From contig NC_069006.1 in the NCBI RefSeq assembly GCF_001194135.2, forward strand, positions 49,390-96,484: 47,095 nt of DNA, given 5' to 3'. The notes under the pieces were generated by a model. It was not told the origin of the DNA and did no database searches. It saw only the letters and a program-made list of their open reading frames with translations. Below are positions 9,544 to 45,935 of this stretch, in pieces. The first letter of the stretch is position 1. Each line of letters starts with the position of its first letter. The stretch comes from Octopus bimaculoides (lineage: Eukaryota). The position numbers and the translations under genes are program-made.

Positions 9544-9576
<33 letters not shown>

Positions 9577-15500: not shown

Positions 15501-17205
15501 TCGGGGTCAATAAAATAAGTACCAGTGGAGTACTGGGGTTGGTGTAATCAACTTGCACTCTCCCACACAATTGCTGGCTTTGTGCTAAAATTTGAAACCA
15601 ATACTGATTTCAAAAATTTCAGGCCACACATTTTAGGCAAGTAGAATGAGGGAGAAATGGTTATTAATCAATTAAATCCACCCCAGTACTTCACTGACTT
15701 ATATTAGTACTTTAGGTTAACGAACTGCTGTGACATAACAAGAATGTGCCACCCGGGGCGGCCCTTAATCTTTAAGCATTTGAACCAGCCATACTCAGCA
15801 AAAATATTCAATTTGTTTTAGGTTGAGACTGGCCGGGTCCTGCTACTCACACTCCCCTACAATGTCATTCTTTTCTACTCTAGGCACAAGGTCCGAAATT
15901 TTTGGTGAGGATGGGGGGGGGGCAGTCGATTACATCGACCTCAGTACGCAACTGGTACCCAATTTATCAACTCCGAAAGGATGAAAGGCAAAGTCAACCT
16001 CGCCAGAATTTGAACTCAGAACATAACAGCAGATGAAATACCAATAAGCATTTCGCCCGGTTGCTCACCGCCTTCCCTACAATGTCATTCTAAAAATAAA
16101 GGGTCATAGGTGTGGCTGGGTGGTAAGAAGCTTGCTTCCCAACCACATGGTTCTGAGTTCAGTCCCACACATGGCTTCTATTATAGCCTCAGGCCAACCA
16201 AAGCCTTGTCAGTGGTAGTGGTAGACAGAAACTGAAAGAATCCCATCATATATCATCATCATCAACATTTAACATCCGTGTTCCAGGCTAGCATGGGTGG
16301 GACGGTACCACAAGAGCCGGCCAGGCTGAAGCCTGCACCAGACTTCTGTGACTGTTTCAGCAGGATTTTTCAGCTGGATACCCTTCTGAACATCAAGTAT
16401 ATATATATATATTTATATATANNNNNNNNNNNNNNNNNNNNNNNNNNNNNNNNNNNNNNNNNNNNNNNNNNNNNNNNNNNNNNNNNNNNNNNNNNNNNNN
16501 NNNNNNNNNNNNNNNNNNNNNNNNNNNNNNNNNNNNNNNNNNNNNNNNNNNNNNNNNNNNNNNNNNNNNNNNNNNNNNNNNNNNNNNNNNNNNNNNNNNN
16601 NNNNNNNNNNNNNNNNNNNNNNNNNNNNNNNNNNNNNNNNNNNNNNNNNNNNNNNNNNNNNNNNNNNNNNNNNNNNNNNNNNNNNNNNNNNNNNNNNNNN
16701 NNNNNNNNNNNNNNNNNNNNNNNNATATTAAATAAGAATTAGATTTGATAGAATAATCTGAACACTAAATGGTTTAGGTTAGGTGCAAGGCCCTCACACG
16801 CCAAAACAAGTTTATACAGCAGACCCAAAGCCACGCCTGGGGGTGGAACGCCCCCCACCACCACCACCACCACGACCCCCTAGTTACACTACAAACGACC
16901 TGGCAGAGATATTAAAGTGTCGGGACAAAATTTCTTGCAGTACTAAACACGTTTGGCATCGAGATTATTCTGTCAGACAATGCTTATTTTTTGTTCTTTT
17001 ACTTGTTTCAGTCGTTTGACTGCAGCCATGCTGGAGCACCGCCTTTAGTTGAGCAAATCAACCCCAGGACATATTCTTTGTAAGCCTAGTACTTATTTTA
17101 CCAGTCTCTTTTGCCAAATCACTAAGTTACGAGGATGTAAACACACCAGCATCGGTTATCAAGCGATGGTGGGGGGGACAAACACAGACACACAAACATA
17201 TATAC

Positions 17206-17241
<36 letters not shown>

Positions 17242-18721
17242 GACGGGCTTCTCTCAGTTTCTGTCTATCAAACCCACTCACAAAGCTTTGGTCAGCCCGA
17301 GGCTATAGTAGAAGACACTTGCCCAAGGTGCCATGCAGTGGGACTGAACCCAGAACCATGTGGCTGGTAAGCAAGCTGCTTATTTATTCACATTGTTTTG
17401 AAATTAATCATGCATTATCTCATGGCTCCACACTTTCAATGGTGGGTTTCTATATTTTTAGAATGACATTGTAAGGTAGGTGTGAGAGGTTGGATCTGAT
17501 CAGTTTTAACATAAAACAGGTAGAATATTTGGGCTGGATATGGAGGGAATTAAAGTGATGATGAAGAGGAGCAAACAGAGAGGCAATCCATTTCATAAGA
17601 ATTATTGTAAGAAAAGGATTGATGAAGAAGCCAAGAAAGCACAAAAAGAAAATATAAAAAGAGGGAAAGAGAAATCAATTCTTACCCATGGCCAGGGGTC
17701 GCACCCACTGTCGGCTGGCTAAATCAAAACCCCATAGATCATTAAAGGTGGTGTTGGTCGAAGTGCAACCCCCAAAAACGTACAATGACTTGTCATAGTA
17801 GCAGGCACAATGAGAATAGCGATCTGTGATTGTGGGGCCATCCCCTGGTAACAATTTCGTCCACAACACTTCGGTACTTGCTATAGCATCGTGGAAGTTC
17901 TGTTCACGCTGATAGATGACACCTGCAACAAAAGACAAGAAAAAAATCAGTGATTCAGACAAAAATAAATAGGTACAGGGATGGTTGTGTGGTAAGACAA
18001 CATAGTTCTTGGTGAGATTTAGCATGAGACAAAACGTGACAAGGCTGTTCCCTTTTGAATTACAAGTACTACTACAACTCATTTTTGCCAGCTAACCACT
18101 AAAGCCACATGCCTTCTGACCCTCTGTCCCTACTTTAATCTCTCGTCACCTGGTATAAAGCCACCGACAAATAAAGTGTCTTGCTCAAGGACACGCCGCC
18201 GGCAATCGAACTCGCAACCCTACGAACATGAGCCGAATACACTAACCACTAGGCCACGCGCCTTTTCGCACACACAAACACACCACATGCACACATACAC
18301 TATGTGAAACAAGGAAGGTTTATACATTAGCAAAAGCAGTCCGACATATTCTCTGGAAGTCGGTTTGGTCACAAACTGATCATAGTCATCTATGATCAGG
18401 TTTGACCGGTAGCGTGAGTAGAGGCGAAGCGAGGAAAGGGGCAAGGGCCAGTCCTGATCGTCTGTTTTGGGGTCTGCCGAGTCGTGGTAGAGAACAGAAA
18501 CTCAAGGACTGCCGTCGTCCCCATTGGGGACGAGCAGGGCAATTAAACAGTATTATCAACACCATAACACACACACACACACACACAATGTAGACATAAA
18601 ATGCGAAAATGAAACTACATGGAGTGACTTTAATGCCTCTTCATTGTACCCCTAAGAAGGGGGTACAATGAAAATTCGACTTCAGTTTCGAAACCGTACA
18701 AAGGTTATTGCTCGGTAGATG

Positions 18722-18757
<36 letters not shown>

Positions 18758-18767
18758 NNNNNNNNNN

Positions 18768-18806
<39 letters not shown>

Positions 18807-19178
18807 ATGTAGAAACATACACACACACATATATATATTTGGATTTAGTTTTGTTTTTCATTCGCAAAATATGCATTTTGTAAAAGACAGTAAAAACTCT
18901 GAAAATCGGCAAAAATAATAATAAAACAGATGGGAGTGTGTGTGTTTGTGTGTATGTATATGTATGTGTTTGTGTGTATTTATATGTATGTGTGTTTGTG
19001 TGTATTTATATGTATGTGTGTTTGTGTAGATATATATATGTTGTATATGTCTATGTATATATACTTATATATATCAATGTACACATATATTGTGTATGTA
19101 TATAGACACACGCATATAAACGTTTGTGTGTGTGTATATACACACACGTACGTAAAAAGAAACGGTAGTATAAATAGC

Positions 19179-19214
<36 letters not shown>

Positions 19215-19530
19215 AAGGCACATAAACATGTATATGTGTTGAGTAGATAATAGTCTTACCGAAGGCAAGACGGTACCATTGTCTGGAGACCAACTTGGCA
19301 GATTGTAAATCGCGGTAGGGAGACAAATAGAAGAAAATATACTCAATTAATTCTTCTGGGAGGTGAGAGATAGAAACTGGTTCCTTTTGACCATCACAAC
19401 AATCCTCATCCTTGCTGCTATCGCCATTTATTGTCTCTGCTCTTCCTCCTTCCTCCTCGTCGTCCGGTTTCTTGCAATTCTCGATGTGGTGGCCATCATC
19501 TTCGTCTTCCATCACAGCTGGTGCTGACAT
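3664..19530 (-). CDS. FBXO42: F-box only protein 42 (F-box + Kelch repeats), spliced gene, 728 aa
   Basis: complement(join(3664..4803,6081..6200,8301..8357,10224..10320,11002..11162,13526..13629,17686..17922,19260..19530)) = 2187 nt, one open frame; all introns GT-AG with matching phases. N-terminal F-box ([30 protein letters not shown]), Kelch repeats ([30 protein letters not shown]) and family motifs LWCHPAC and [10 protein letters not shown] recognised from human FBXO42. Confidence 0.95.
6081..6200 (-). CDS. FBXO42: FBXO42 coding exon 7
   Basis: acceptor tttgtag|ATC; [40 protein letters not shown]; donor AAG|gtaggt. Confidence 0.95.
7198..7805 (-). mobile_element. Non-LTR retrotransposon 3' remnant (L1/Tx1-like ORF2 C-terminus plus AATAAA and ATT tail)
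   Basis: Minus-strand translation [17 protein letters not shown]...[10 protein letters not shown]...[14 protein letters not shown] resembles the region after the LINE CCHC knuckle; ends AATAAACGAATTATTA. Clade assignment is tentative. Confidence 0.55.
8301..8357 (-). CDS. FBXO42: FBXO42 coding exon 6
   Basis: acceptor tttcag|ATT; [19 protein letters not shown]; donor CAG|gtactt. Confidence 0.93.
9318..9580. repeat. Compound (CA)n(TA)n microsatellite (similar tracts at 18720-18830, 24765-24880, 29480-30010, 36150-36370, 38395-38440)
   Basis: Direct inspection; source of the spurious HT/YI/CV ORFs. Confidence 0.95.
10224..10320 (-). CDS. FBXO42: FBXO42 coding exon 5
   Basis: acceptor ctgcag|G; [32 protein letters not shown]; donor CAG|gtaaat. 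Confidence 0.95.
11002..11162 (-). CDS. FBXO42: FBXO42 coding exon 4
   Basis: acceptor ctccag|GCA; [53 protein letters not shown]; donor GG|gtatgt, phase 2. Confidence 0.93.
11811..12030 (+). mobile_element. SINE family B, representative copy (many more at about 6335-7195, 7815-8030, 12725-13490, 15385-15600, 15870-16070, 21790-21945, 37330-37610, 41335-41730)
   Basis: Recurrent core GAGCTGGCAGAA...TGAGTTCAAATTCC...GGTCGACTTTGCCTTTCATCCTTT...CCTTGTGCC with a B-box-like GTTCAAAT, flanked by (TAA/ATT)n. Confidence 0.8.
13526..13629 (-). CDS. FBXO42: FBXO42 coding exon 3 (absent from ORF track)
   Basis: acceptor tctctag|GT; [34 protein letters not shown]; donor CAG|gtaaat. Confidence 0.95.
14291..14661 (+). 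mobile_element. tRNA-derived SINE family C, near full length
   Basis: A-box TGGCCCAGTGG and B-box GGTTTCAATTCCC; 3' module GTACTCAGCCACTTGCACGTT...GGCTGTTCCATTGATCGGATCAAC shared with minus-strand copies near 9830-9990, 21530-21640 and 44990-45070. Confidence 0.8.
16995..17384 (-). mobile_element. SINE family A copy (further partial copies near 630-850, 3170-3455, 23925-24120, 31660-32010, 32160-32390, 36623-36930)
   Basis: Reverse complement colinear with 43647-44031. Confidence 0.85.
17686..17922 (-). CDS. FBXO42: FBXO42 coding exon 2
   Basis: acceptor ttgcag|GT; VIYQREQ...[46 protein letters not shown]; donor G|gtaag. Confidence 0.95.
18115..18263 (-). mobile_element. tRNA-headed SINE remnant (family D)
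   Basis: Minus strand GGCGCGTGGCCTAGTGGTTAG...GAGTTCGATTGCC (A and B boxes), followed by CCTTGAGCAAGACACTTTATT. Confidence 0.65.
19260..19530 (-). CDS. FBXO42: FBXO42 coding exon 1 (start codon, F-box)
   Basis: [11 protein letters not shown]...WYRLAF G; donor G|gtaaga, phase 1. Confidence 0.92.
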
Positions 19531-30202: not shown

Positions 30203-30382
30203 ATGTTGGAACCGACACTACGCGAGGTGCTCCGCGCCCATGAAAGGATCTTACCCTTTATACGACGCACACCGATATTCAGTAGCCGGACAGTGGACAG
30301 GCTTACCGGACTAACTGTCCACTTCAAGACAGAGAACTTTCAGAAAACCGGTTCTTTCAAGGCCAGAGGAGCATTGAATGGG
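30203..30382 (+). CDS. SRR: SRR-like coding exon 1 (PLP-binding Lys53)
   Basis: MLEPTLREV...[15 protein letters not shown]; donor GGG|gtaaga; ATG position slightly uncertain. Confidence 0.9.
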
Positions 30383-30649
30383 GTAAGACAGATGGCAAAA
30401 CGTTGGCTCTTTCGTTTGCTATGTGTGCGTTTGCGTTTGTATGTATGTATGTATGTGTGTGTGTGTGTATGTATGTATGTGTGTGTGTGTGTTTGTGCAT
30501 GCATACATGTATGAATGTATTGTGCTGGTCCTTGTGGTTGTTGTTGTTGTCGCAGTGTTTGTGGTGGTGGTGGTGGTGGTAGTAACTTTGGTGGTACTTG
30601 TTTGCTGACGGTGGTGGTGGTGATTCTTGTAGATATATGATTGGGGCTA

Positions 30650-30696
<47 letters not shown>

Positions 30697-32365
30697 AGGA
30701 TCAACTGGTTATATCGTGCATGTATTGTAATTTCGGTGTTGGTATGTTGTGGTTGTAGTAGAGGTGGTGGCATCAGTGATTTGTGAGGTAGTAGTTCTTT
30801 TTGTTGTTATTGTTGTTGTTCTTTAGCACGCACACACACACACGCACTCACACACACCTGACCAAGGTCTGCCCTGCTCCAACCCTTAGATCTATGCTCA
30901 AAGATATCCCCCCCCACCAACCACCACCACCGCCATCGATGAATGTCGAGTCCTTTTATTTATAGGACAAGGTTTATCTAGCAGTTGTAGTCTGAGGGAG
31001 ATTCAGCTGTTGTCTCTATCCAGTCAATTGACAACATCATCAGAGGTTCTCTTATTTGCTTTGTGATGGCAATACTTGGAGCTGGTATTTGGTCTGGTGG
31101 TNNNNNNNNNNNNNNNNNNNNNNNNNNNNNNNNNNNNNNNNNNNNNNNNNNNNNNNNNNNNNNNNNNNNNNNNNNNNNNNNNNNNNNNNNNNNNNNNNNN
31201 NNNNNNNNNNNNNNNNNNNNNNNNNNNNNNNNNNNNNNNNNNNNNNNNNNNNNNNNNNNNNNNNNNNNNNNNNNNNNNNNNNNNNNNNNNNNNNNNNNNN
31301 NNNNNNNNNNNNNNNNNNNNNNNNNNNNNNNNNNNNNNNNNNNNNNNNNNNNNNNNNNNNNNNNNNNNNNNNNNNNNNNNNNNNNNNNNNNNNNNNNNNN
31401 NNNNNNNNNNNNNNNNNNNNNNNNNNNNNNNNNNNNNNNNNNNNNNNNNNNNNNNNNNNNNNNNNNNNNNNNNNNNNNNNNNNNNNNNNNNNNNNNNNNN
31501 NNNNNNNNNNNNNNNNNNNNNNNNNNNNNNNNNNNNNNNNNNNNNNNNNNNNNNNNNNNNNNNNNNNNNNNNNNNNNNNNNNNNNNNNNNNNNNNNNNNN
31601 NNNNNNNNNNNNNNNNNNNNNNNNNNNNNNNNNNGGTGGTGGTGGTGGTGGTCGATCCAGATCCCAGATTCAGTCCCGCTGCATGGCACTTTGGGCAAGT
31701 GTTGTCTAAGCCGAACTCTAAGCCTAATCCTAACCCTAACCCTCATGCCGACCAAAGCCTTATGAGTGGATTTGGTAGACGGAAACTGAAAGAAGCCCAT
31801 CGTGTGTGTGTTTGTCCTCCCCCACCCCCCACACTGCTTGACGACCATCATTAGTGTATTTACGTCCCTGTAACATAGCAGTTCAGCAAACGAGAACAGT
31901 CAAATGGGAAAGAAAATCTTGCGTTCGATGCATTCTACTAAAGTTCTTCAAGGCAGTGCCCCAGGATGGCCACAGTCTAATGACTGAAACAAGTAAAAGA
32001 CAAAAGACCAGGGCTCACCAAGAGCTTAACAACAACAGAAGACATCAAGGGATTACTTACACAGACAACCTGCTAGAAATAGCAGCCAAATATTCTTTTA
32101 ATAGTACTCTACCACCCTAGAAAAATGAAGGACACATTGTATGATGCTGTACACACTTTTTCTTTGACTTGTTTTACTCATTGGACTGTGACCATGCTGG
32201 AGCACTGCTTTGAAGGGTTTTAGTTGAGTAAATGCTTGTTTTTTTAATATATTTTTTGTTTTGTTTTGAAGCCTCTTATTCTGTTGTTTCATTTGCTGAA
32301 CTGCTAAGTTACACGGACATAAACGAGCAAACAACAATTGTCTAGTGGTGGAGGGAGGGGGACAA

Positions 32366-32396
<31 letters not shown>

Positions 32397-34724
32397 CTAG
32401 CAATGCACCGTAGCATTGCCTGGGTGTTATGATCTACAGCCACATTGTATTATTTGTTCCTTTCCTATGGGCAGATTCGGCACACAAGGGGTATGAAACA
32501 AACAGCTCTTCTTTATAAACATGTTTTTGGGTCATTTTCTGATGAACAATGCTGCAGTTTCCATCTACCTAATTCAGCCACAAGTCTCTCGTTAGCTTAG
32601 GGATATAGTAGAAAAACACTTGCCCAAAATAGTAAAATTTGTTCAAGCAGAGTTGCCTCCCTTAGATAAAGACCTCAAAATTGTGCAACCCGACCTCGTT
32701 TTTGAGGTTGTTTTTGTAGTAAAAAAGAGTTGTACGAAAAAATCTACTTTATTTGTCAGCCAAAAGATTACTGAATCTTTTGATACCTCATACGTCAAAA
32801 TTGGCAACTCAGTTTTCAAATCCATAAGAAAAATATGCACGCGCACACACAGACACACAAACTCTGTTTTATTATATAAGATTTATTACTGGAATTGCCC
32901 AATATGGATCTATATTAATTTCTTTTTAGGGGTGATGGGTATGAAAAGTACACATATATGTGTTTATATGCATACATGTGTGTCCGAATGTGTACATTAT
33001 TTATGTACACATAAATAATTCCCATTAGTTAATGAAATTTTGAATTATTGTGTTTATTGTATAGCGTTTCAAGGAAAGTATATTTGTTTTTAACCATTTT
33101 ATAAACTTTTGATGTCTAAATGTGCACCTGAAAATATCTACACATCTAGATACGCATGTGTGTAAGCGTACATAAAGTTAATCATAGATATACACATACA
33201 CACATATAGTCTATATATGCATAAACACACACATACATACACTTATACAGACATATAACACACTCACCGGTTTGATTTCCACTCATTTACAAATAGGGTG
33301 AACACATGGTACAAGACTGATAAATATCAAGGAGTGATGTTTGTAGAGGCCACAGCCCCTGGAGAACTAGCCTGTAGGTTTTGAAAAGCTCTGAAGGAGA
33401 CTAAATTCAACATTAAGATTATTGAAAAGCCAGGGAACTCCATCAGATCACAACTATGTAGGACGTACCCCTTTGAGAATACCACATGCACCAATGACAA
33501 CTGCATGGTATGTAGTCTACAGTATAAGGTGCATAGAATGTGCTTGTAAAGACAAGAACATGATATACATAGGTGAAACATCTAGGAGCATTGCGGAAAG
33601 ACTAAATGAACATTTGAAACAATATAACGACAAAAAACAATCCTCCATACTTTACCAACATGCCAACTTGACATTCGCATTTTATCCAAGCACCCAAAGG
33701 ACCCAACACTCAGACAAGTACAAGAGTACATTCACATTAATGAAACATCCCCAGGAAGTATACATAGGTGTCATACCCCAACACCCACAGTTATATATAC
33801 ACAGATAGTGTTGTCAAAGGAGTCGTTAGAAATGGCCATAATGGATTGACACCTGTACCTCTACTGTTACTCATTCATATTTTACTCACCTGTCTTGGAA
33901 TCTGCCCTTCGTAATATTATGGAGCATATATTTAATATAATGTAAATGTGTGAATAGCTCAAGAGTGGATTTCTTTACTCAGCTGGGTCTAATTGTCTAC
34001 ATACACTGCAAGAATATCATTCGGCCGGGACTTGTGTACCAAGTTTGATAGTTACATAATATTGTTGTGTGTGTTTATATTATTCTGATCTAACGAGGTG
34101 CCACAATTTTAGTACCTAATTCAACTGAATCTTACTTATATTTTATATATATACATACATACACAGAGCAGGCTTCAATACAGTTTCTAACTATCAAATT
34201 CACTCAATAAGCATTGGTCAGCTCAAAGTTATTGCAGAAGACACTTGCCCAAGGTGCAGTGCTGTGGAATTGAACTTAAAATTATGTGGTTGGGAAGCAA
34301 GCTTCTGAATCGTATATCCACGCCTCTGATCATGTTGAACAAAAAAAAAAAAAACAATAGAATAAGAGTTGGTCAAGGCAGGAGTGTCTTTGATTTTATG
34401 CCTGTCAGTACACTGACCAAGGGCTAAACAACACCACCAACAAGTGTTTCATTTCAAGTGGGAATTGCACAGGTGAGCAATCAGTATGTAAACAAGAAAG
34501 ATTATTTCTCACAAACTGAGATAAATATATATATATATACGTGTGTGTGTTTATATATATATATATATATATATACGTCCAACCCATGCTAGCATGGAAA
34601 GCGGACGTATGATGATGATGATGATGATATATATATATATACACATGGCATGGTACCATAGGCAACAGGTAGAAAGCCTGCTACTCATGTTGGATTCAAG
34701 GAGTTCCAACAAAACCTGAATTAA

Positions 34725-34775
<51 letters not shown>

Positions 34776-37700
34776 GGTGATGATGATAATGATTGTTGTT
34801 GCTGATTTTTTTTGTAGATTCTGACTCTACTGGAACGGAAACCAACCATAAAAGGAGTGGTCTGTATACTACTACTACTACTACTTTTCCTTATTTTCCT
34901 CCTTTCCCTTCTCTCCTCCTAAATACCACAAGGCATTCGCTGAAATGTTACCAATTTTGCCAAGCAAATAACCCATATGTCCTGGTTTCGTGGGTCAGTT
35001 TGAGAAGAAAGGGGCAGTCAGCCCTGATGAAGACACTTGCCCAAGATGCCACGCAGTGGGATTGACCCGAAACCATGCAAGCCACTCCTGCACCTATATA
35101 TATATATATAGGTTGTTAGTGACCTCCAGGTATTGGAGGCTCTACACAGAGTGGTATTGGTGTCAATGAGACCCAGAGGTGTCAGGTAATGCTCAGTAAG
35201 TGCTATGGATAGACCATAGTTAAGCTCCAGGTTTGGTGATTAAGCGAATAAGGGATCCAACGTAGGTCATGTATCAGCGTGTGTGTATATAAGGATTTAC
35301 TTTTCGTAATGAGATAAAAAAAAACAAGGCTGTGCATAATACAGAACATTTATAAATGTTCTAAAATCTACACAGCCTTGGTTTTTTTTTATCTCATTAC
35401 CAAAAGTAAATTTATATATATATATATATATTGTTGTGTCTGGAGAGAGTTATACTGCCTTAATATCTAACACACACACTGGTTCAATTTCCACTCATTT
35501 ATTATTTATATTTTTTCTTTCCAAAATTTTCATTGCTTTTGCAACATTGTCAATGGATGTTGACTCTATCCACACACACACACACACACACACACACATT
35601 AGGAACTCTTCCAGTTTCCATGTACAAAATCTGCACATGTGGCTACNNNNNNNNNNATATATATATATTGTTGTGTCTGGAGAGAGTTATACTGCCTTAA
35701 TATCTAACACACACACTGGTTCAATTTCCACTCATTTATTATTTATATTTTTTCTTTCCAAAATTTTCATTGCTTTTGCAACATTGTCAATGGATGTTGA
35801 CTCTATCCACACACACACACAAAATCTGACCCCACCCCTGTGCCTATGTTAAAAAAATCAGCATTACTGTTATTAATTTCTTCCTCTGGACCCCATCATA
35901 ATCCTTTCTCAATAATCATCAGTATTTTTTTTTTCTCTTGCTTTGATTTTTTTTTTTTTTCATCCAGGTAACACACAGTACTGGTAACCATGGACTCGCC
36001 CTCGCCTGGGCAGCACAACAGATCAAACTACCCTGTTCTGTGGTCGTACCCTGCAATACCCCAGCTGTTAAAGTGGAAGCTGTCAAAGCTTATGGCGCCA
36101 ATGTACAACTTTGTCAAATTGACATACAAGACAGGTATAATTCTTGTGTCTATATTCACACACAAACACAGATGCATTCACACTCACACATACATACACA
36201 CACAAACTCACACACATGCATATGCACTCACACACACAAACACATACACACACACATACATACTTACATACACAAACTCACACATGCATATGCACTCACA
36301 CACACAAACACACACACATATACATACTTACACACACAAACTCACACACACACACACGCACACATGCATATATTTATCACCAACATTATCATTTTGAAGT
36401 TCCCTTTTCCATCCTAGCATGAGTCAGACAGAATTGTTTTTGAGGGTGCTTTTCCTGTTGCCAACCCTCAAGTGCGTCTATGTAAAAGGTAATATTTCCC
36501 TGTGGTTGGACATAGTTTCATAGAAGATTGGAAAGGAACAACCTTGCTTGTATGATGGTGATACTCATTTACAGCCATCATATGAAGTCAAGACAACACA
36601 ACACACGCACACACACACGCACACAATATGATAGGCTTCTTTCAGTTTCTGTTTCTCCTATTGACTCACAAGGCTTTGGTCAGCCTGGGGCTATAGTAGA
36701 AGACACACGCCCAGGGTGTTATGCAGCAGGACTGCAAAGCACCCTGGTTGGACACTCTCCCTTTTCTCCTGATTTGGCCCCAACATGAAAAACACTTGGC
36801 TGGGAACCAGTATAACAAAGATGGTGATGATGTTGATAGCTTTTTTGACCAACAAGATGAACGTCTCTTCACCAATAGCATCCAAGTACTGCAACACCAA
36901 TGCAAGCAAGCTTCTTAATCACACAACACCCAAACACACACACACACATAAAATATGTCCTTCTCTTTAGATTTTATCCTTTCTCTTTAACCCACACTGA
37001 ATCAGTGCATCATACATACATTACACAATATTCTATTAAATTCTACACATGCATTACATAATACCATTATATATTTCACACATCCTTTGTGATTTTGTGT
37101 TTGTATTTCAAGCATACACTTCATAATATCATGATACATTCCAGACATACAAAACACCATAGCATACATGTCGCACATGCTTTGTGATGATAATAATGTT
37201 TTATATTCTGGACGTACATTGAGATAATGAAATGTATTCTTAACAAACATTGCAATGTATTATTATTATTACTATTATTATTATTATTACTATTATTATT
37301 ATTATTACTATTATTATTATTATTACTGCTAAGGCAGCGAGCTTTTGGAGTCGATAAATTAAGTACCAGTTGAACACTGGGGGGGGNNNNNNNNNNNNGG
37401 GGGGGGGGGGTCGATGTAATAGATTCATCCCCTCTCCCAAAATGGCTGCCCTTGTGGCAAAATTTGAAAGCATTGTTATTATTATTGCTAAGGCAACAAA
37501 CCGGCAAAATCATTAGCACACTTGACAAAATTGCTTAACAGCATTTCATTTGTCTTTACATTTTGAGTTCAAATTCCACTGAGGTTGACTTTGCATTTCA
37601 TCCTTTCTGGGTTGATAAATTCTGATAATAATTTATACATATTGTGGGTGCCCTAGGTATGATAAGAAAGGGACGTGTATACATTGGTACACACAACCAT

Positions 37701-38389
37701 ATGTGTACAACATGGTGATCTCATATCAAGGTAAACAGTGCATGACCTCGCAGGTGGGGCCCAGTTAGAATTTTCTTCAGGTTGAGTAGCCCATCGCTCA
37801 AATGGTCCTTGAATAAGGGTTGTTTAAGGATGTTGAATGAAACACCAATTTTTCCAAAGGTGAATTATTCAAACCCCAAAGAATTCCTCTCAACACATGG
37901 CTATGATGTTCCCCCACTACTTCTGCTCGTGATCAGAGATGCACATATCGTCAGCCACCAAGGGACATGCTCAACTAGTTAAGGTCAAACAACTAACAAG
38001 CAAATCTGTGGTATTGAGCAGAATATTTGCAGTAGCCCATCTTTTATACCAAGACAAAACAATGTCCACGATAAGACTTCCAATCAGGAGAGCTACTGCC
38101 TGGTACTACATCAAGACATTCATTATTATTATTATTATTATTATTATTACAGACATACATTATGTGAAAAAATTGCAGATGAAAAACAGTTTGAAATCAT
38201 TGCTCCATTTGACAATGTGGATGTCATTGCCGGTCAGGTGAGATATCAAAATGCACACCTGTTTAAAATAATGTACTGATAGACATGTGGGTGTGTCTGT
38301 GTGTGGCAAGGGTGGTGCTGATGGGTGCTGATGCAGGTATTCTTATGTGTATATGGATGTGGTTTCCACTTAAATATTTGTATGAGTGA

Positions 38390-38442
<53 letters not shown>

Positions 38443-38663
38443 TGTGCTCACACACACGTGTGTGTGTAATATATGTCTATGCATATATATATATATATAT
38501 ATATCAGGTGTGGCTGTGTAGTAAGAAGCTTGCTTCCCAACCACATGGTTCCGGGTTCAGTCCCACTGCATGGCATTTTGGGCAAGTGTCTTCTACTATA
38601 GCTTTGGGCTGACCAAAGCCTTGTGAGTGGATTTGGTAGACGGAAACTGAAAGAAGTCTGTTG

Positions 38664-38715
<52 letters not shown>

Positions 38716-39892
38716 CATGTATGCATGTTTGTATGCATGTGTCTGTGTTTGTCACCTACCATCGCTTGACAACCGATGTTGGTGTGTTTACGTCCCTGTA
38801 GCTTAGTGGTTCAGCAAAAGGGACTAATAGAATAAGTACTAGGCTTACAAGGAATAAGTCCTGGGGTCGATCTGTTCAACTAAAGGTGGTGCTCCAGCAT
38901 GGCCACAGTCTAATGACTGGAACAAATAAAAGAATAAAAAAGAATATGTATGTAAATGTATGTGTATATATGTCTGTGTGTGTAAATATAAATATACACA
39001 TGTGTGCTTATATGTATGTATGTATGTATGTATGTGTGTATATATATATATATATATATGTATGTATATGTATTTTTATATACGAGTGTATGTGTATGTA
39101 TATACACATATTTTTCTATAAATACACACATACACACATACAAGTGGCTTCCACATACTCAGAAGTCTGTTGGTTGATTGTGTGGCTATATTAGAAGATA
39201 TTTATCCAAGGTGTCACACAGTGGGAACACACACAATCTAAGATCAAAGGAGTGGGTTCCAAATGTGACCATCTCATTTTTTGTATATCAGACCACATTG
39301 TCCCTTCTGGTGTATACTTTAAACAATTCAGTGAGATTTGAGAGAGATGTGGCTGTTACTTCTAGCCAGCCATCCAATGTACAGGCTCCCTGGTTAAGCA
39401 ATTTTTAAGCTTTTGTTGAATCCATAAAAACAGTAAAAGTCACAATAATATCTTGGGTACATTACAGGGTACAATTGGAATTGAACTCATGCAACAAGTA
39501 CCTGAGCTGGAAGCAGTTATAGTTCCTGTTGGAGGTGGTGGTCTCGCTGCGGGGATATCGCTTGCCACAAAGTTAGTGAGTCCAAAGACTAAAGGTAAGA
39601 TCTTTACGTTGTCTGACTTATTATTAGGCGTTGTTCTTCGAGTCAAAGAGTCAGCATGGTACAGGAGGACTAAAGTACTGGTTTAGTGATCCCTGTGATG
39701 GTAGCGATAATTTTGGTTATGGTACCTGAACAAGATACGAGGAAATGAGAAGTTGAAACCAACTCTGAGTGGAACACAATCATCATCATCATCACCACCA
39801 CCAATTGTTGGTTTATGAATATTTACCTGAAGATTGTTCGTGTAAAACGTGAAATGACTTGTAAAAATACACCAAATATGTGAAAATCTGTT

Positions 39893-39938
<46 letters not shown>

Positions 39939-42900
39939 CATAAATATACAGGGATTAGCATGAGTTGCTTCTCCAACATACTGAAAATTTAGAAATAGCA
40001 GTCAAAGAGCTACTGATTCTAAACTACAAATTTTTTCTCTAACGGATGGCGATATTTATGGCACACACAAAACAAAAACAGAAGAGAAAAGCAAAAACAA
40101 ACCTGCCTTTAGTTAATTGAGTACGACGTTTCACGGTTAAGAGTATGAAGGTACTCTATTCCGATCTTCAGCCCAATATTCGAATAAATTTGAAAGTGTC
40201 TATATAACTCATGGGAATTTTGACCATGCGACATCAAAAACACATGAGGAAGGCACTTACAAAACTTATCGTCTAGTACGTTCAAATACTTCACTCCAAA
40301 GAATCTATTCCATGTGCGCCACAAATAGTCCCGCATAAAAAGTCCCGTATAAAAGGGTTACAGTTTAACCATTCAATTAGAGGCATCAATATAAATATAC
40401 AGATATAGGGCAGGGAATCGTCAATTAGTAATAAAATTAATAATTAACAATTTTGCCAAGTAGTTCAGTATGAAAAAACCTTTATCGGTAAAACCATTTA
40501 TAATCATAAATATACAGGGATTAGCATGAGTTGCTTCCCCAACATACTGAAAATTTAGAAATAGCAGTCAAAGAGCTACTGATTCTAAACTACAAATTTT
40601 TTCTCTAACATGTACATATATGTATGTATTTCTAATGGTCTTCTCGCTATTTCCAGTATATATGGTGGAACCACTTGGCAAAGAATTGGGAAAGAGCATG
40701 AAAGCAGGTAAGCTGTAGTTACTCTATATTTGTAGCAGTAGTAAATGCAGCAGCAGTAGCAGCAGTTGTAGTAGTAGTAGCAGTAGTAGTTGTAGTGGTA
40801 GCAGAAGTAGCAGCAGCAGTAGTAGTAGCAGTAGTTGTAGTAGTAATAGTAGTAGTTGTAGTAGTAGTGCTAGAAGTAGTAGTAGTAGTAGCAGTAGTAG
40901 TAATAGTAGTAGTACTAGTTGTAGTAGTAGCAGCAGCAGCTGTAGTAGTAGTAGTAGTAGTGCCAAAATTTGAAGCAGTTATGAAGGAGGTGAGGTGGTG
41001 GGAGGGGAATTGTTGATGCCTCACACAAAATGTTTATCAGAATTTCTTCTGGCTTTATGGTTAGAGTTCAATTCCAGGTGAGGTCAGCTTTGCTTTTCAT
41101 CCTTTCGAGGCTAATGTAATAAAGTACCAGTCAAACCCTGGTGTTGATATAATTAATNNNNNNNNNNNNNNNNNNNNNNNNNNNNNNNNNNNNNNNNNNN
41201 NNNNNNNNNNNNNNNNNNNNNNNNNNNNNNNNNNNNNNNNNNCACCCACCCCACCCTGTCAAAATTGCTAGCCCTGTACCTAAATCAGAAACCATTATTA
41301 TAATTATTATTATTATTATTGTTGTTATTATGAAATGGAAGGTGGTGACCAGGCAGAATCGTCAAGCATGCTGGGCAAAATATTTATCAGCGTTTCATCT
41401 GCCTTTATGTCCTGAGTTCAAATTCCACTGAGGTCAAGTTTGCCTTTCATCTTTTGAAATTGATGAAGTAAGTACCAGTGGAATACTGGTGCTCAATGTA
41501 ATCAACTTGCTCCCCTCCTCTAAAAGTTTTAGGCCTTGCACCTATAGTAGAAAAGATTATTATTATTAACATTAGCTCGCAGAATCATTAGCACACTGAA
41601 CAAAATGTTGTTCAGGGTTGAAATTCGTCTGAGATTGCCGTTGCTGTTCATCCTTTCAAGGATGAAAAAACAAGTACCAGTCGATAGAATTAACCCTTAA
41701 AATTTCAGGCCTTGTGCCAATTGTAGAAAGGCGTATAAATAAGTCATGGGGTCGATTCAAGGCAGTGCTCCAGCATGGCTACAGACTAATGACTGAAACA
41801 AGTAAGAGATAAAAAATAAAAAAATAAAAAAAAAATAAATATATCAATACATTGGACACTCCAAGCTGAAGTATTGAGTACTTCATTTTTAAATACACTT
41901 CTTCCCATAAACACATCACAACAGTAGCTTCTTACTTTTGTGTGTCATTGTCTTATTATTCTTTTCTTTTCTGCTGAAAGGGCGCCGAATGTGGGAAGGA
42001 CCCCCAGCTCGAGTGAACACCATAGCTGATAGTATAGCCAGGCAGCAACTTGGTGAAATCACATGGCCTATAGTGCTGAAGTATGCTGAGAACGATGTCC
42101 TGAGTGTAGTAAGTATGTTGTCAGTCCTCAAAAAAAAGCATACAGCTTACCAAGTGGAGTCTATGTGAGTCAAGATGTACTGGAGTCAAACCAGGCCAGG
42201 GAATTTCCTGGACGCCACAGAATGTTTGTATATTTTAAAGATTATGGAGGTATGTGACCAAGTGATTAGAGTGTTGCATTCACGATCACAAGATTGTGGT
42301 TTCAATTTCTAGACCAGGCGATGCATTGTATTCTTGAGCAAAACACTTCATTTCGTGTGGCTCCAGTTCACTTAGGTAGCAAAAAGGAGTAATCTTGCGA
42401 CAGACCAGTGTCCTGTCCAGGTGGGGAATATATATATGCCGAGGAAACCGGGAAACTAGCTTTATGAGCTTATGGGTTAGGAAGGACTTGTGGAAGTATG
42501 TAGCATAGTGGTTAAGATGTTGGACTCATGATCGTAAGATTGTGGTTTCAATTCCAGGACTGGGTGATGTGTTGTGTTCTTGAGCAAAACACTTCATTTC
42601 ACGTTGCTCGAGTCCACTCAGCTGGCAAATTTGAGTAATCCTGTAATGGGCTGGCGTCCTATCCAGGAGGGACTATATACACCACAGAACCTGGAGAACT
42701 GGTTTTATGAGCCTGATATGGCTGAGGAAGGACCTTTTTCCTTTTGATATTGAAGATTTGCAATCACAAAAAGGAAGGAAGAAATTTTGTGGTCCCTAAT
42801 AAAAAGATTCCTATCAGAAAAACCCGACATTCAATACATGTGGATTTTACCAGCAACCCACACATGTAGAATCCTACATATAGGAATCCACATGTGCCAA

Positions 42901-43489
42901 GAATCATACATATAGCTGTCTGCTGGAGTTCCACACATGTAGCAACTTTATATACATGCAAGTATATATACGCATACATACATACATTCATACACATTGG
43001 TGGTCGTCCATTTGTGACCAAGGAAGACCATTAGTGACCATTGCCCATGCAACATGTCAGCAATGTCTGTGATTGAGGTTATTGCATGTGCAGTTGGCTG
43101 CTTCACCATGGTTCACATACACACAGAGCTTCCATGTGGTGTTCTCCTGCTGAACCAGGCATTGGAAAGTCACGTTATTGATAAGACAGACAGAGCAAGG
43201 TATCTGATGCCAATATGGGTCACAGACTCAGGAATGTGGGAGCACCATGAAGTGCCAGCAAAAGATCCCCTAAATTTTCTATGCCATTCCCTTCATATCT
43301 GGTTTTATATCAGAGTGACCTTCTAGAGACAAGCTTTAACAAAACTAAAGGATGCCTCACTCCCAGCAGTCTTCTAGCATGCAGGACATTAACCCAGAAT
43401 TTTTTAGGACCTATGCTACATACAAGCATATGTACATGCATGCATACATACATACAAGCACATATATATGTGTGTGTATGTCTTATATA

Positions 43490-43520
<31 letters not shown>

Positions 43521-43608
43521 GCACCAGTGTAACAAATATTTATTAATCTGTGTGTTTATAAATATATACAAATACACATACACACATGCATATATACACA
43601 AGCCAGTG

Positions 43609-43647
<39 letters not shown>

Positions 43648-45935
43648 GTGTGGCTGTGCGGTAAGTAGCTTGCTTAACAACTACATGGTTCCGGGTTCAG
43701 TCCCACTGCGTGGCACCTTGAGCAAGTGCCTTCTACTATAGCCTCGGGCCGACCAAAGCCTTGTGAGTGGATTTGGTAGACGGAAACTGAAAGAAGCCTG
43801 TCGTATATATGTATATATATATGTATGTGTGTCTGCTTGTCCCCCCAACATCGCTTGACAACCGATGAGGATGTGTTTACGTCCCCGTCACTTAGCGATT
43901 CAGCAAAAGAGATCGATAGAATAAGTACTAGGCTTCCAAAGAATAAGTCCTGGGGTCGATTTTCTCAACTAAAGGCAGTGCTCCAGCATGGCCACAGTCA
44001 AATGACTGAAACAAGTAAAAGAGTAAAAGAGTATATATATATAAACATATATATGTATATATCAGTATTTCCAGATACCTGCAAACTCACACACTATCCA
44101 TATGCGTACATGCAGCTAAATACAATAATTTAGTAAATATTTCTCTGTTTTCAGACAGATCAAGAAATCATTGAAGGAATGAAGTTTGCTTTTCAAACTA
44201 TGAAGGTAAGCTCTGTGTGTGTGTGTGTGTGTCTGTGTGTAGATGCATGTTGTCATTTAACCTTTAAAACTGCCCCTGATCCAGTCATGCCCATCTCCTC
44301 TCATTTTCTATCACAGAGTGTCTTGTCTCAGATTACTCTGTGTTAGCTACTATTTTTAGCAGGCTTATGACCAAAACAATCCAGATATGACCATTCTGTC
44401 CTTTATTTACTTATAATTTATCTTGAAGTATTTTTTCTAATATCTCTGCTCTTTGTTTAAGGGAGAAGGATGTGACACGAAGGATCTGCTATTTCTAGCA
44501 GATTAGATACTCAAACTGAAGCTCCCGCATTGACTTTTCTTTTTGTTGTTGATTATTATTGTTTTTGTTTTCCACCTTTAGATTACCCACCCCTTCTTCA
44601 TCAATCATACAGGTGAGCAAGAGCACCTACCTTGCTCTGGAGATGAAATACAATGACACAAGCATGGCTCAGTGGTTAAGTTTGTTTCACAAGATAAATA
44701 CCTGTGGCCATATGTGATGCTTGAGAAGACCCATCAAGCCAAGTGAAATTGTAATCATGGTCAATGCCAGTCTTGCATAACTGGCACACAAAAGCACCCT
44801 TACAGAGGCAGTGACAAATGTCCAAGACCCTTGGCAATGTGCTGTGCTTGAAAAGGCTTGTCAAGCCAAGTGAGATCACAGTTGTGGCTGAGGCCAGTGT
44901 TTCAGAACTGTTACCTGTGCAGGTGGTGTGCAAAAGGCACACTATACTCTTGTAGAAACCATGCCAAATCAGACTGCTCATGAAATTAATGTGGATGTGG
45001 CTGAGCACTCCACAGATACATGTACCCTTAACATAATTCCCAGGGAGATTCAGCAGGACACAGAGTGTGACAAGGCTGGCCCTTTCAAATTCTGGTACTA
45101 ATCATTTTTGCCAGCTGAGTGGACTGGAGCAATATTAAATAAAGAATCTTGCTCAAGGACACAACATGCAACCATGTATTGAACTCACAGTCTTACAACC
45201 ATGAGTCAGATACCCTAACCACTGAGCCATGTGCCTTCACATATCTATACCTACATACATATGCACAAACTTTCTTAATATTTCATATTCATTCCTTTCT
45301 TTATTGTTAATGAAGTTGTTATAATATATATATTGACCCCTTTATCCTTTTACTTTGGCCTTCATTATGTGGAGGAGCATGGCTTAGTGGTTAGGCTATT
45401 GGACACATAATCATAAGATTGTGGTTTCAATTCCTGGACTGGGCAACGTATTGCGTTCTTGAGCAAAACACTTCATTTCACGTTGCTCCAGTCCACTCAG
45501 CTGCCAAAAGTGAGTAACCCTGTGATGGACTTGTGTCCCATCCAGATGGAATTATATAGGCAATGGAAACCGGGAAACTGATCATATGAATCTATATGAC
45601 TCAGGATTTTTAGTAATGTATGATTCCCTCTTTCCAGCTTGTAAAATATAGTTTATGCTTCAATCCAGTCCATAAGGCCAAATGAGTTTGACACACCCAG
45701 CTAGACATGGTTGCTCAAATACTAAAGTTAGCAGCTAAGCCTTACAATTGTTATTCTATTGTTATAGGTGGTCATCGAGTCTGCTTCAGCAACTGGTCTC
45801 ACTGCTCTCCTACAACACAAGTTTCAACATCTACATACTTCAGCACAAAACGTTGGAGTGATTCTTTGTGGTGGCAATGTAGATTTGGATCAGTTACCAT
45901 GGCAAACGAACCTGTCTTCAAATAAGGAAACCTGA
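30203..45935 (+). CDS. SRR: Serine racemase-like / serine-threonine dehydratase family PLP enzyme (fold type II), spliced gene, 332 aa
   Basis: join(30203..30382,34818..34859,35968..36134,38153..38237,39468..39594,40657..40707,41981..42108,44155..44205,45768..45935) = 999 nt, one open frame; GT-AG introns with matching phases. PLP lysine motif [34 protein letters not shown] phosphate loop, TIAD, CGGNVD. The symbol reflects homology; the activity is not established. Confidence 0.9.
33323..33750 (+). mobile_element. Penelope-like retroelement remnant (GIY-YIG endonuclease)
   Basis: [14 protein letters not shown]...[21 protein letters not shown]...C..C / [10 protein letters not shown]...[17 protein letters not shown]...SSILYQHA / [16 protein letters not shown], with stops and frameshifts. 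Confidence 0.85.
34818..34859 (+). CDS. SRR: SRR-like coding exon 2 (42 nt)
   Basis: acceptor ttttgtag|ATT; [14 protein letters not shown], matching human LERKPKAV; donor GTG|gtctgt; fills the missing segment in phase 0/0. Confidence 0.85.
35968..36134 (+). CDS. SRR: SRR-like coding exon 3
   Basis: acceptor catccag|GTA; [28 protein letters not shown]...[15 protein letters not shown]; donor AG|gtataa. Confidence 0.95.
36744..36900 (+). mobile_element. Mariner transposase C-terminal fragment nested in a SINE
   Basis: [14 protein letters not shown] (YSPDLAP motif), then HLAGNQY...[24 protein letters not shown]. Confidence 0.8.
38153..38237 (+). CDS. SRR: SRR-like coding exon 4
   Basis: acceptor ttacag|A; (R)[28 protein letters not shown]; donor CAG|gtgaga. 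Confidence 0.93.
38507..38940 (+). mobile_element. SINE family A copy
   Basis: Colinear with 43647-44031. Confidence 0.85.
39468..39594 (+). CDS. SRR: SRR-like coding exon 5
   Basis: acceptor ttacag|GGT; [42 protein letters not shown]; donor G|gtaaga. Confidence 0.95.
40116..40177 (-). ncRNA. Minimal type-I hammerhead ribozyme-like motif with canonical core
   Basis: AUUGGG-CUGAAGA-UCGG(AAU AGAGUA CCUUCA UACUCU UAA)CCGU-GAAA-CGUCG-UA/CUCAAU. Confidence 0.7.
40657..40707 (+). CDS. SRR: SRR-like coding exon 6
   Basis: acceptor tttccag|TA; (V)[16 protein letters not shown]; donor G|gtaagc. Confidence 0.9.
40735..40965. repeat. (GTA)n/(GCA)n trinucleotide tract in SRR intron 6 (also (GTA)n at 30649-30697)
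   Basis: Direct inspection. Confidence 0.95.
41981..42108 (+). CDS. SRR: SRR-like coding exon 7
   Basis: acceptor gaaag|GG; (G)[42 protein letters not shown]; donor GTA|gtaagt. Confidence 0.92.
42246..42735 (+). mobile_element. Two head-to-tail copies of tRNA-derived SINE family E (third copy 45371-45606)
   Basis: Repeated AAGATTGTGGTTTCAATT...TCTTGAGCAAAACACTTCATTTC...GGAAAC(C/T)GG...TATGAGC with A/B-box-like heads. Confidence 0.75.
43647..44031 (+). mobile_element. tRNA-derived SINE family A with internal (TA)n/(TG)n, representative full copy
   Basis: Head TGGCTGTGCGG...GGGTTCAGTCCC; body TTGTGAGTGGATTTGGTAGACGGAAACTGAAAGAAG; tail CCAGCATGGCCACAGTCAAATGACTGAAACAAGTAAAAGAG. Confidence 0.85.
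44155..44205 (+). CDS. SRR: SRR-like coding exon 8
   Basis: acceptor ttttcag|ACA; [17 protein letters not shown]; donor AAG|gtaagc. Confidence 0.93.
45768..45935 (+). CDS. SRR: SRR-like terminal coding exon 9
   Basis: acceptor ttatag|GTG; [16 protein letters not shown]...[29 protein letters not shown]. Confidence 0.94.
   Translation: MVIESASATGLTALLQHKFQHLHTSAQNVGVILCGGNVDLDQLPWQTNLSSNKET

What the first reader, a model, noticed from the sequence alone, without database searches (positions are those of the whole stretch)
35980..35982. Thr instead of Ser at the racemase re-face base (human Ser84)
The motif reads H-S-T-G-N (ACT codon, Thr79), against HSSGN in human and yeast serine racemase. 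Ser84 is the established re-face proton donor that separates racemases from dehydratases, which typically have Ala there. A natural Thr variant suggests altered racemase/eliminase balance or substrate range. This matters because cephalopod nervous tissue is known for abundant free D-aspartate.
Basis: partly seen in the sequence, partly recalled or inferred. Interest (0 to 1): 0.7.

Follow-up and report, generated by a model that had tools for sequence, protein, structure and literature searches.

The report
Octopus serine racemase with Thr base
The octopus serine-racemase gene really does carry threonine instead of serine at the proton-donor position. This conservative swap has arisen at least eight times in animals and is already known, from a human mutant and a sea-squirt enzyme, to leave a working though weaker racemase.

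Summary
Codon 35980-35982 is ACT, encoding Thr79 in the motif HSTGN. It lies in exon 3 of a nine-exon plus-strand gene (30203-45935) that encodes Octopus bimaculoides 'probable serine racemase' XP_014780876.1.

The Thr is not an assembly error. Octopus vulgaris has ACT and Argonauta hians has ACA at the same codon. Squid and cuttlefish have Ser (AGT/AGC), so one G-to-C change arose on the octopod stem. The gene is under strong purifying selection.

The rest of the catalytic apparatus is intact, and the AlphaFold model superposes on the bivalve aspartate racemase 5YBW.

Thr at this site is rare but recurrent: 16 of 188 close relatives, at least eight independent origins, including scallops, sea urchins and crustaceans.

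Published work shows that human S84T is the only residue-84 mutant that keeps racemisation, about 10-fold weaker. Ciona SRR3, a natural Thr enzyme, makes D-serine.

The most likely reading is therefore a functional racemase/dehydratase with Thr as the re-face acid/base, probably attenuated.

The proposed link to D-aspartate is not supported. The specificity loop reads Ala-Pro-Phe and lacks the serines found in all characterised aspartate racemases.

Interest is modest.

The parts
30203..30382 (+). Coding exon 1 (Met1-Gly60). It contains the PLP-binding Lys53 (AAG, 30359-30361), equivalent to human Lys56.
   Evidence: Lys53 is invariant in the 49-sequence alignment.
34818..34859 (+). Coding exon 2 (Ile61-Val74), 42 nt.
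   Evidence: GT-AG splice sites; 100% match to P0001.
35968..36134 (+). Coding exon 3 (Val75 to the first two bases of Arg130). It holds the asparagine loop HSTGN, Leu84, Lys109 and Arg130.
   Evidence: Exon length and boundaries are the same in Argonauta.
35980..35982 (+). ACT codon for Thr79, at the position of the human Ser84 re-face acid/base.
   Evidence: O. vulgaris has ACT and Argonauta has ACA. Decapodiform cephalopods have AGT/AGC Ser.
35995..35997 (+). CTC codon for Leu84, at the position of human Gln89 (the ATP-allostery residue).
   Evidence: Role of Gln89 from PMC5998037.
38153..38237 (+). Coding exon 4. It contains the substrate-specificity loop Ala147-Pro148-Phe149 (38202-38210), equivalent to human His152-Pro153-Asn154.
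   Evidence: Loop rule from PMC11850409.
39468..39594 (+). Coding exon 5. It contains the tetraglycine phosphate-binding loop Gly180-Gly183 (39531-39542).
40657..40707 (+). Coding exon 6. It contains Glu205 (human Glu210) and the clade-typical Gly208-Lys209.
41981..42108 (+). Coding exon 7.
44155..44205 (+). Coding exon 8.
45768..45935 (+). Coding exon 9 with the TGA stop. It contains the ILCGGNVD motif, with Cys where human has Ser313.

Best explanation
Thr79 is a genuine, fixed, octopod-specific substitution at the re-face acid/base position. It arose by a single AGT-to-ACT change. The gene appears to be the only serine/aspartate-racemase-family gene (fold-type II PLP enzyme) annotated in this octopus.

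The hydroxyl group is retained, so the two-base mechanism should still run. Lys53 forms the PLP Schiff base and acts on the si face. The Thr79 hydroxyl protonates or deprotonates C-alpha on the re face. Lys109 and Arg130 are in place.

The most likely consequence of the extra methyl group is a quantitative one: lower catalytic efficiency and some shift among beta-elimination substrates. A switch of reaction type or of substrate class is less likely. From its Ala-Pro-Phe specificity loop, the enzyme is predicted to act on serine (racemisation plus dehydration) rather than on aspartate.

Shown here: the codon, its conservation, gene integrity, purifying selection, the fold, and the recurrence of Thr. 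Taken from the literature: the behaviour of S84T and of Ci-SRR3. Inferred: the activity of the octopus protein itself.
For: The codon and gene model are exact. Thr is kept in three octopod genomes with two different Thr codons. Decapodiform sister taxa have AGT/AGC Ser.

Between Octopus and Argonauta pN = 0.105 and pS = 0.737, giving dN/dS of about 0.04. Exon structure is identical apart from 3 nt in the last exon.

Lys53, Ser78, Gly80, Asn81 and Lys109 are invariant, and Arg130 and Glu205 are at least 90% conserved, in the 49-sequence alignment. The tetraglycine loop Gly180-Gly183 is intact in octopus.

The protein matches the PALP domain at E = 5e-73. The best solved relative is 5YBW aspartate racemase at E = 5e-98, followed by serine racemases. 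The AlphaFold model has pLDDT 93.6, with TM-score 0.94 and rmsd 1.3 A to 5YBW. Thr79 lies between strand 74-77 and helix 81-92.

Thr occurs in 16 of 188 relatives in eight separate clades, with Ser ancestral. Several are whole clades: scallops plus Solemya, three echinoids, and octopods.

Human S84T is the only residue-84 mutant that retains L-Ser racemisation, about 10-fold less efficient, and elimination also falls about 10-fold (PMC6424897). Ciona Ci-SRR3, naturally S84T, makes D-Ser in vitro, and its knock-down lowers larval D-Ser (PMC8916719).
Against: No octopus enzyme has been assayed. No octopus cDNA or reads were examined.

Ci-SRR3 is a poor enzyme in vitro (Km about 160 mM) and also carries R135T, so it is an imperfect proxy. 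Human S84T data come from a different sequence background.

Leu at the Gln89 position and Ala at the first loop position show that the octopod active-site surroundings differ in other ways too. The effect of Thr79 cannot be isolated by sequence alone.

The single-copy inference rests on the absence of other octopus hits among the best 120 of one search, not on a whole-genome scan.
Confidence: 0.62

Rival explanations
1. Thr79 retunes substrate range. Under this reading the octopod enzyme is the source of the abundant neural D-aspartate, or acts on another amino acid, and Thr79 contributes to that specificity.
For: The closest solved structure is a mollusc aspartate racemase (5YBW). Only one family member is seen for Octopus, Argonauta and cuttlefish among the best hits, so any family-derived D-Asp would have to come from this enzyme. 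D-Asp was first found in Octopus brain (PMC6116324). A squid orthologue was deposited as 'aspartate racemase like protein'. Human S84T does change preference among charged elimination substrates (PMC6424897).
Against: According to PMC11850409 (citing Uda 2016, 2017, 2020), characterised animal and plant AspRs invariably have two or three Ser in the specificity loop. Octopus has Ala-Pro-Phe. The Scapharca AspR and every SSS/PSS-loop homologue examined have Ser, not Thr, at the base position. None of the 16 Thr proteins has a Ser in the last two positions of that loop. Squid and cuttlefish are also D-Asp-rich (from memory) and keep Ser.
Confidence: 0.12
2. Thr79 marks a loss or strong reduction of racemase function. 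Under this reading the octopod enzyme is essentially an L-serine/L-threo-hydroxyaspartate dehydratase.
For: Racemisation falls 10-fold in human S84T (PMC6424897). Ci-SRR3 has a very high Km (PMC8916719). The top NCBIfam similarities are to beta-hydroxyaspartate dehydratases, though all score below their cut-offs. Bacterial members of the family include pure dehydratases with SerR-type loops (PMC11850409). Leu at the Gln89 position suggests altered regulation (PMC5998037).
Against: Dedicated dehydratase relatives carry Ala, not Thr. The hydroxyl group has been conserved across a divergence at which synonymous sites are saturated. S84T and Ci-SRR3 both still racemise.
Confidence: 0.15
3. The change is effectively neutral. 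Ser and Thr are interchangeable here, and Thr was fixed by drift with no functional meaning.
For: There are eight independent origins in different animal groups, with no consistent co-varying residue. The substitution is chemically conservative.
Against: Thr remains rare (about 1-9%), although it is one mutation away from AGT/AGC Ser codons. Human S84T costs about 10-fold in efficiency (PMC6424897). Where Thr was sampled in more than one species it forms whole clades (octopods, scallops plus Solemya, echinoids) with no Ser member nested inside them.
Confidence: 0.1
4. The Thr codon is an artefact of sequencing or assembly.
For: The assembly has many gaps. A 10-N gap with a duplicated flank lies in the intron, with the duplicate ending 147 nt upstream of the exon.
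Against: Independent assemblies of O. vulgaris and Argonauta hians both encode Thr, one with a different codon. The exon itself lies in uninterrupted sequence.
Confidence: 0.01

Closest known systems
Scapharca (Anadara) broughtonii PLP-dependent aspartate racemase, PDB 5YBW
   Same: It is the closest solved relative (E = 5e-98, 47% identity, TM-score 0.94). It shares the protostome-clade features VEPxGK and ILCGGNVD, the PLP lysine, Arg130 and the overall fold.
   Different: It has HSSGN, not HSTGN. It has the Ser-Ser-Ser specificity loop where octopus has Ala-Pro-Phe. It has SAGG rather than GGGG in the phosphate loop.
Human/rat serine racemase (PDB 3L6B, 3L6C) and its S84T mutant
   Same: They share the fold, the two-base apparatus (Lys56, residue 84, Lys114, Arg135) and the tetraglycine loop. 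The S84T mutant has the same residue as octopus and still racemises (PMC6424897).
   Different: Identity is about 39%. Human has Gln89 (Leu84 in octopus), His-Pro-Asn in the loop, Asp216 as metal ligand (aligned with Leu211) and Ser313 (Cys in octopus).
Ciona intestinalis Ci-SRR3
   Same: It is a natural Thr at the Ser84 position in an animal serine racemase homologue. It was shown to make D-Ser in vitro and in vivo (PMC8916719).
   Different: It is a divergent chordate paralogue, one of three in Ciona. It also has R135T, whereas octopus keeps Arg130 and appears to be single-copy.
Catabolic/biosynthetic threonine dehydratases and serine dehydratase (TdcB 2GN0, IlvA 1TDJ, SDH 1PWE)
   Same: Same PALP fold and the same S-x-G-N asparagine loop.
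   Different: They are more distant (E = 1e-44 to 1e-25). Dehydratase-like representatives carry Ala at this position (ASAGN). Octopus keeps a hydroxyl-bearing residue.

Membership tests
Animal serine/aspartate racemase family (fold-type II PLP enzymes, PF00291) | PALP domain and overall fold | tested here: met
   PF00291 at E = 5e-73 over residues 17-312. AlphaFold model pLDDT 93.6, with TM-score 0.94 to 5YBW and 0.88 to 3L6B.
Animal serine/aspartate racemase family (fold-type II PLP enzymes, PF00291) | Sequence places it inside the animal SerR/AspR clade rather than with dehydratases | tested here: met
   The best hits are cephalopod and mollusc SerR/AspR homologues. PDB ranking is AspR, then SerRs, then threonine deaminases.
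Animal serine/aspartate racemase family (fold-type II PLP enzymes, PF00291) | Schiff-base / si-face Lys (human Lys56) | tested here: met
   Lys53 in SFKARG, invariant in alignment A2.
Animal serine/aspartate racemase family (fold-type II PLP enzymes, PF00291) | Hydroxyl-bearing re-face residue (human Ser84) rather than Ala | tested here: met
   Thr79 retains the hydroxyl. The strict HSSGN motif is NOT met: 172 of 188 relatives have Ser. Thr is functionally tolerated in human S84T and Ci-SRR3 (PMC6424897, PMC8916719).
Animal serine/aspartate racemase family (fold-type II PLP enzymes, PF00291) | Supporting residues Lys114 and Arg135 and the tetraglycine phosphate loop | tested here: met
   Lys109, Arg130 and Gly180-Gly183 are present.
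Animal serine/aspartate racemase family (fold-type II PLP enzymes, PF00291) | Measured racemase activity | not testable with these tools
   This needs recombinant protein and chiral amino-acid analysis.
Aspartate racemase subtype (Uda triple-serine-loop rule) | [quoted passage not shown] | tested here: not met
   Octopus has Ala147-Pro148-Phe149. Rule as stated in PMC11850409.
Serine racemase subtype (Uda rule) | His/Pro - Pro - Phe/Tyr/Asn at the same loop | tested here: inconclusive
   Pro148-Phe149 fit the rule. The first position is Ala (Glu in squid and cuttlefish), not His/Pro.
Nucleotide-regulated SR/TdcB group | Gln at human position 89, coupling the ATP site to the active site | tested here: not met
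   Leu84 in Octopus and Argonauta. Apolar replacements (Met, Ala) go with loss of ATP control (PMC5998037).
Mammalian-type divalent-cation site | Glu210, Ala214 carbonyl and Asp216 ligands | tested here: inconclusive
   Glu205 is present, but Asp216 aligns with Leu211. The whole protostome clade, including 5YBW, reads VEPxGKxxE. The alignment in this loop is not certain.
Threonine/serine dehydratases (TdcB, IlvA, SDH) | Ala at the re-face position (S-A-G-N) | tested here: not met
   Octopus has S-T-G-N. ASAGN representatives are nearest to TdcB. NCBIfam dehydratase models all score below their cut-offs.

The most novel reading that the evidence does not exclude
The octopod enzyme is the only serine/aspartate-racemase-family protein in these animals. 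Under this reading it makes the famous neural D-aspartate (or both D-Asp and D-Ser) by a route that does not use the triple-serine loop. Thr79, together with Leu84 (loss of ATP coupling) and the Ala-Pro-Phe loop, would then form a distinct, convergently evolved specificity and regulation solution. That solution might be shared with scallops and sea urchins, which also carry Thr.
Probability: 0.1. Interest if true: 0.6.

Novelty: new member of a known kind. Interest (0 to 1): 0.27.

Why it matters
Octopus brain is where free D-aspartate was first found, yet no cephalopod amino-acid racemase has been characterised. This gene appears to be the only member of the relevant enzyme family in octopods, so its properties bear on how cephalopods make D-serine and D-aspartate.

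The Thr variant gives a natural set of S84T enzymes: octopods, scallops, sea urchins, some crustaceans and Ciona SRR3. These could test how the re-face base tunes racemisation against elimination.

On present evidence, however, the substitution is conservative, recurrent and already known to be compatible with racemase activity. It refines existing knowledge rather than opening a new mechanism.

Tried and rejected
1. A second protein search, using only the 118 residues around the motif, was meant to catch fragmentary octopod transcripts. It returned 13 distant, mostly bacterial or unnamed metagenomic fragments and did not even recover P0001. It was uninformative.

2. An exact-protein look-up for octopus transcript contigs found only the genome record, so there is no cDNA confirmation.

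3. A search for residues that co-vary with Ser-to-Thr across five Thr lineages found no consistent partner. Only position 84 changes in all of them.

4. A test of association between Thr and the non-Ser loop gave 0 of 16 Thr proteins against 33 of 172 Ser proteins with Ser at loop positions 153-154. Counted by lineage this is 0 of 8, P about 0.18, which is not significant.

5. The Uda 2016 paper on invertebrate SerR/AspR is not held. I therefore could not check whether any enzyme characterised there carries Thr. One candidate, recalled from memory only, is a Strongylocentrotus purpuratus 'AspR'. A sea-urchin homologue with HSTGN exists (P0297), but its identity with the characterised protein is unverified.

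6. Assembly artefact was rejected.

7. A dehydratase-only reading based on NCBIfam names was rejected as a classification, because every model scores far below its cut-off.

Full report
**What is at the coordinates**

The plus strand at 35974-35988 reads CAC AGT ACT GGT AAC, encoding His-Ser-Thr-Gly-Asn. A tblastn with human serine racemase found six collinear plus-strand matches between 30.2 and 45.9 kb.

A protein search returned Octopus bimaculoides 'probable serine racemase' (P0001, XP_014780876.1 / A0A0L8GJA8). A search over candidate donor and acceptor sites gave one GT-AG model of nine coding exons whose translation equals that protein exactly. The exons are:
- 30203-30382
- 34818-34859
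- 35968-36134
- 38153-38237
- 39468-39594
- 40657-40707
- 41981-42108
- 44155-44205
- 45768-45935

In this model, 35980-35982 is codon 79, ACT, Thr. The window is identical to GCA_001194135.2 chromosome CM046626.1 over all 19,893 overlapping bases. The observation and the residue number are therefore correct.

**Is the Thr real?**

No octopus reads or cDNA were available, and an exact-protein look-up found only the genome record. Two further octopod genomes agree, however. Octopus vulgaris, an independent assembly, has ACT. Argonauta hians has ACA, in an exon with the same boundaries.

Cuttlefish (Acanthosepion pharaonis) transcripts and a second decapodiform transcript set have AGT and AGC, both Ser. 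The simplest history is one G-to-C change, AGT to ACT, on the octopod stem, followed by a synonymous ACT/ACA difference.

Between Octopus and Argonauta, non-synonymous divergence is 0.105 and synonymous divergence is 0.737, which is saturated. That gives dN/dS of about 0.04. All nine exon lengths match except for 3 nt in the last exon. The gene is intact and under strong purifying selection, and Thr has been held through that divergence.

**What the protein is**

It is a fold-type II PLP enzyme: PF00291 at E = 5e-73. By sequence, the closest solved structure is the bivalve Scapharca aspartate racemase 5YBW (E = 5e-98). Next come serine racemases from Dictyostelium, maize, human, rat and S. pombe, and only then threonine and serine dehydratases.

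An AlphaFold model built on 49 homologues has mean pLDDT 93.6. It superposes on 5YBW with TM-score 0.94 and rmsd 1.3 A, and on human serine racemase with TM-score 0.88. Thr79 sits in the loop between strand 74-77 and helix 81-92. This is the asparagine loop at the helix N-terminus, where Ser84 sits in the human enzyme.

The other catalytic and cofactor residues are in place:
- Lys53 (human Lys56)
- Ser78 and Asn81
- Lys109 (human Lys114, proposed to lower the pKa of Ser84)
- Arg130 (human Arg135)
- the Gly180-Gly183 phosphate loop
- Glu205 (human Glu210)

Two differences from human looked striking at first: VEPxGK in place of the Asp216 region, and Cys for Ser313. Both are shared by the whole protostome clade, including 5YBW. 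They are not octopus peculiarities.

**How unusual is Thr?**

Among the 150 best representatives of 50%-identity clusters, one has HSTGN. About 120 have Ser, about 20 have Ala, and a few have Gly, Leu or Val. The Ala-bearing ASAGN type is closest to catabolic threonine dehydratase.

Among 188 close relatives gathered in two searches, 16 have Thr. On a neighbour-joining tree they fall in eight separate clades, with Ser ancestral and a parsimony minimum of eight changes:
- octopods
- scallops (five species) together with Solemya
- three sea urchins (Strongylocentrotus, Lytechinus, Diadema)
- the crab Eriocheir
- a Cherax isoform
- three sequences of unknown source

Thr is therefore rare but recurrent. 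In the clades sampled from more than one species (octopods, scallops plus Solemya, sea urchins) no Ser-bearing member is nested inside.

No other position changes consistently with it. For Octopus, Argonauta, cuttlefish and the scallops, no second family member appeared among the best 120 hits, although oysters and clams showed several paralogues in the same list. This suggests the Thr enzyme is the only family member in octopods, but it does not prove it.

**What is already known about Thr at this site**

The review PMC6424897, summarising Nelson et al. 2017, reports on human residue-84 mutants. S84A, S84D and S84N lose racemisation. S84T is the only mutant that keeps L-Ser racemisation, about 10-fold less efficient. 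L-Ser beta-elimination also falls about one order of magnitude, and preference shifts towards L-serine-O-sulfate over L-threo-hydroxyaspartate.

PMC8916719 describes Ciona Ci-SRR3, which naturally has Thr at this position (and Thr at 135). The recombinant protein makes D-Ser from L-Ser, with a high Km of about 160 mM. Knock-down lowers larval D-Ser. A natural Thr variant with racemase function is therefore already on record. I found no paper on a cephalopod member of the family.

**Most likely mechanism**

The two-base racemase mechanism is retained. Lys53 carries the PLP and acts on the si face. The hydroxyl of Thr79 acts on the re face. The beta-methyl group probably costs some efficiency and slightly repositions the general acid, as in S84T. 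That is a quantitative tuning rather than a change of reaction class. I give this about 0.6. The sequence facts are shown here. The kinetics are inferred from the human mutant and from Ciona.

**The D-aspartate link**

D-Asp was indeed first found in Octopus brain (PMC6116324), and the nearest structure is an aspartate racemase. Sequence evidence points the other way, however.

According to PMC11850409, animal and plant aspartate racemases invariably have two or three serines in the loop at human 152-154. Serine racemases and serine dehydratases have His/Pro-Pro-Phe/Tyr/Asn there. Introducing serines converts mouse SerR towards AspR.

Octopus has Ala147-Pro148-Phe149, and squid and cuttlefish have Glu-Pro-Phe. 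Neither has a Ser. None of the 16 Thr proteins has a Ser in the last two positions of that loop. The Ser-loop proteins, including 5YBW and Penaeus monodon 'aspartate racemase', all keep Ser at the base position. By lineage count this association is not statistically significant (P about 0.18).

The sequence therefore gives no support for Thr79 being an aspartate adaptation. It cannot be excluded without an assay, and I give that reading about 0.12. A dehydratase-leaning enzyme (0.15) and a neutral change (0.10) are the other live rivals. An artefact is essentially excluded.

**Other points seen**

Leu84 occupies the position of human Gln89. PMC5998037 ties Gln89 to ATP allostery, and apolar residues there (Met in SDH, Ala in plant SR) go with loss of nucleotide control. 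Octopus, Argonauta and one decapodiform have Leu. The octopod enzyme may therefore not be ATP-regulated, which may matter as much for function as Thr79.

**Verdict**

The feature is a new lineage-specific instance of a known, tolerated variant in an already annotated gene. It offers a useful natural experiment for enzymologists but not a surprise. Interest is 0.27.

Noticed in passing
window 35995-35997 (CTC, Leu84): Leu occupies the position of human Gln89, the residue that couples the ATP site to the active site. Apolar residues there (Met, Ala) accompany loss of nucleotide regulation in SDH and plant SR (PMC5998037). Leu is shared by Argonauta and one decapodiform transcript (P0005), whereas cuttlefish and Todarodes keep Gln.
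   Followed up: partly
window 38202-38210 (Ala147-Pro148-Phe149): The substrate-specificity loop has no Ser, so it is not aspartate-racemase type. Its first position is Ala (Glu in squid and cuttlefish) rather than the His/Pro reported for eukaryotic serine racemases (PMC11850409).
   Followed up: partly
window 40668-40688 (Glu205...Gly208-Lys209...Leu211): The human metal ligand Asp216 aligns with Leu211. The whole protostome clade, including the 5YBW aspartate racemase, reads VEPxGKxxE with a nearly invariant Gly-Lys. This suggests a different arrangement, or none, at the mammalian divalent-cation site.
   Followed up: no
window 35420-35584 and 35657-35821, flanking the 10-N gap at 35647-35656: A perfect 165-nt direct duplication has its second copy starting immediately after the gap, in intron 2, and ending 147 nt upstream of exon 3. 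It looks like an assembly gap artefact and does not touch the exon.
   Followed up: yes
window 36154-36372: A long imperfect CA/CACACA-rich microsatellite array starts about 20 nt into intron 3, directly after the exon-3 donor site. Similar TG/CA tracts recur throughout the window.
   Followed up: no
window 3664-19530, minus strand: A neighbouring gene lies head-to-head with the racemase gene. One exon has an F-box (19051-19530; PF12937, E = 1e-10). One has Kelch repeats (17675-18082). A large Gln/Ser-rich open reading frame lies at 3664-4803. Together they look like an F-box/Kelch protein.
   Followed up: partly
L011 (Octopus vulgaris OX597839.1) 7285-15802: The O. vulgaris annotation of the orthologue (P0045, 167 aa) starts inside exon 5. 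Exons 3 and 4, including HSTGN, are nevertheless intact upstream in the same locus. The deposited model appears truncated.
   Followed up: partly
homologues P0006-P0012, P0326, P0297, P0330, P0333, P0046, P0072, P0065, P0177, P0336: Thr at the same position occurs in scallops plus Solemya, three sea urchins, the crab Eriocheir, a Cherax isoform and three unplaced sequences. That is at least eight independent origins, all with non-Ser specificity loops.
   Followed up: yes
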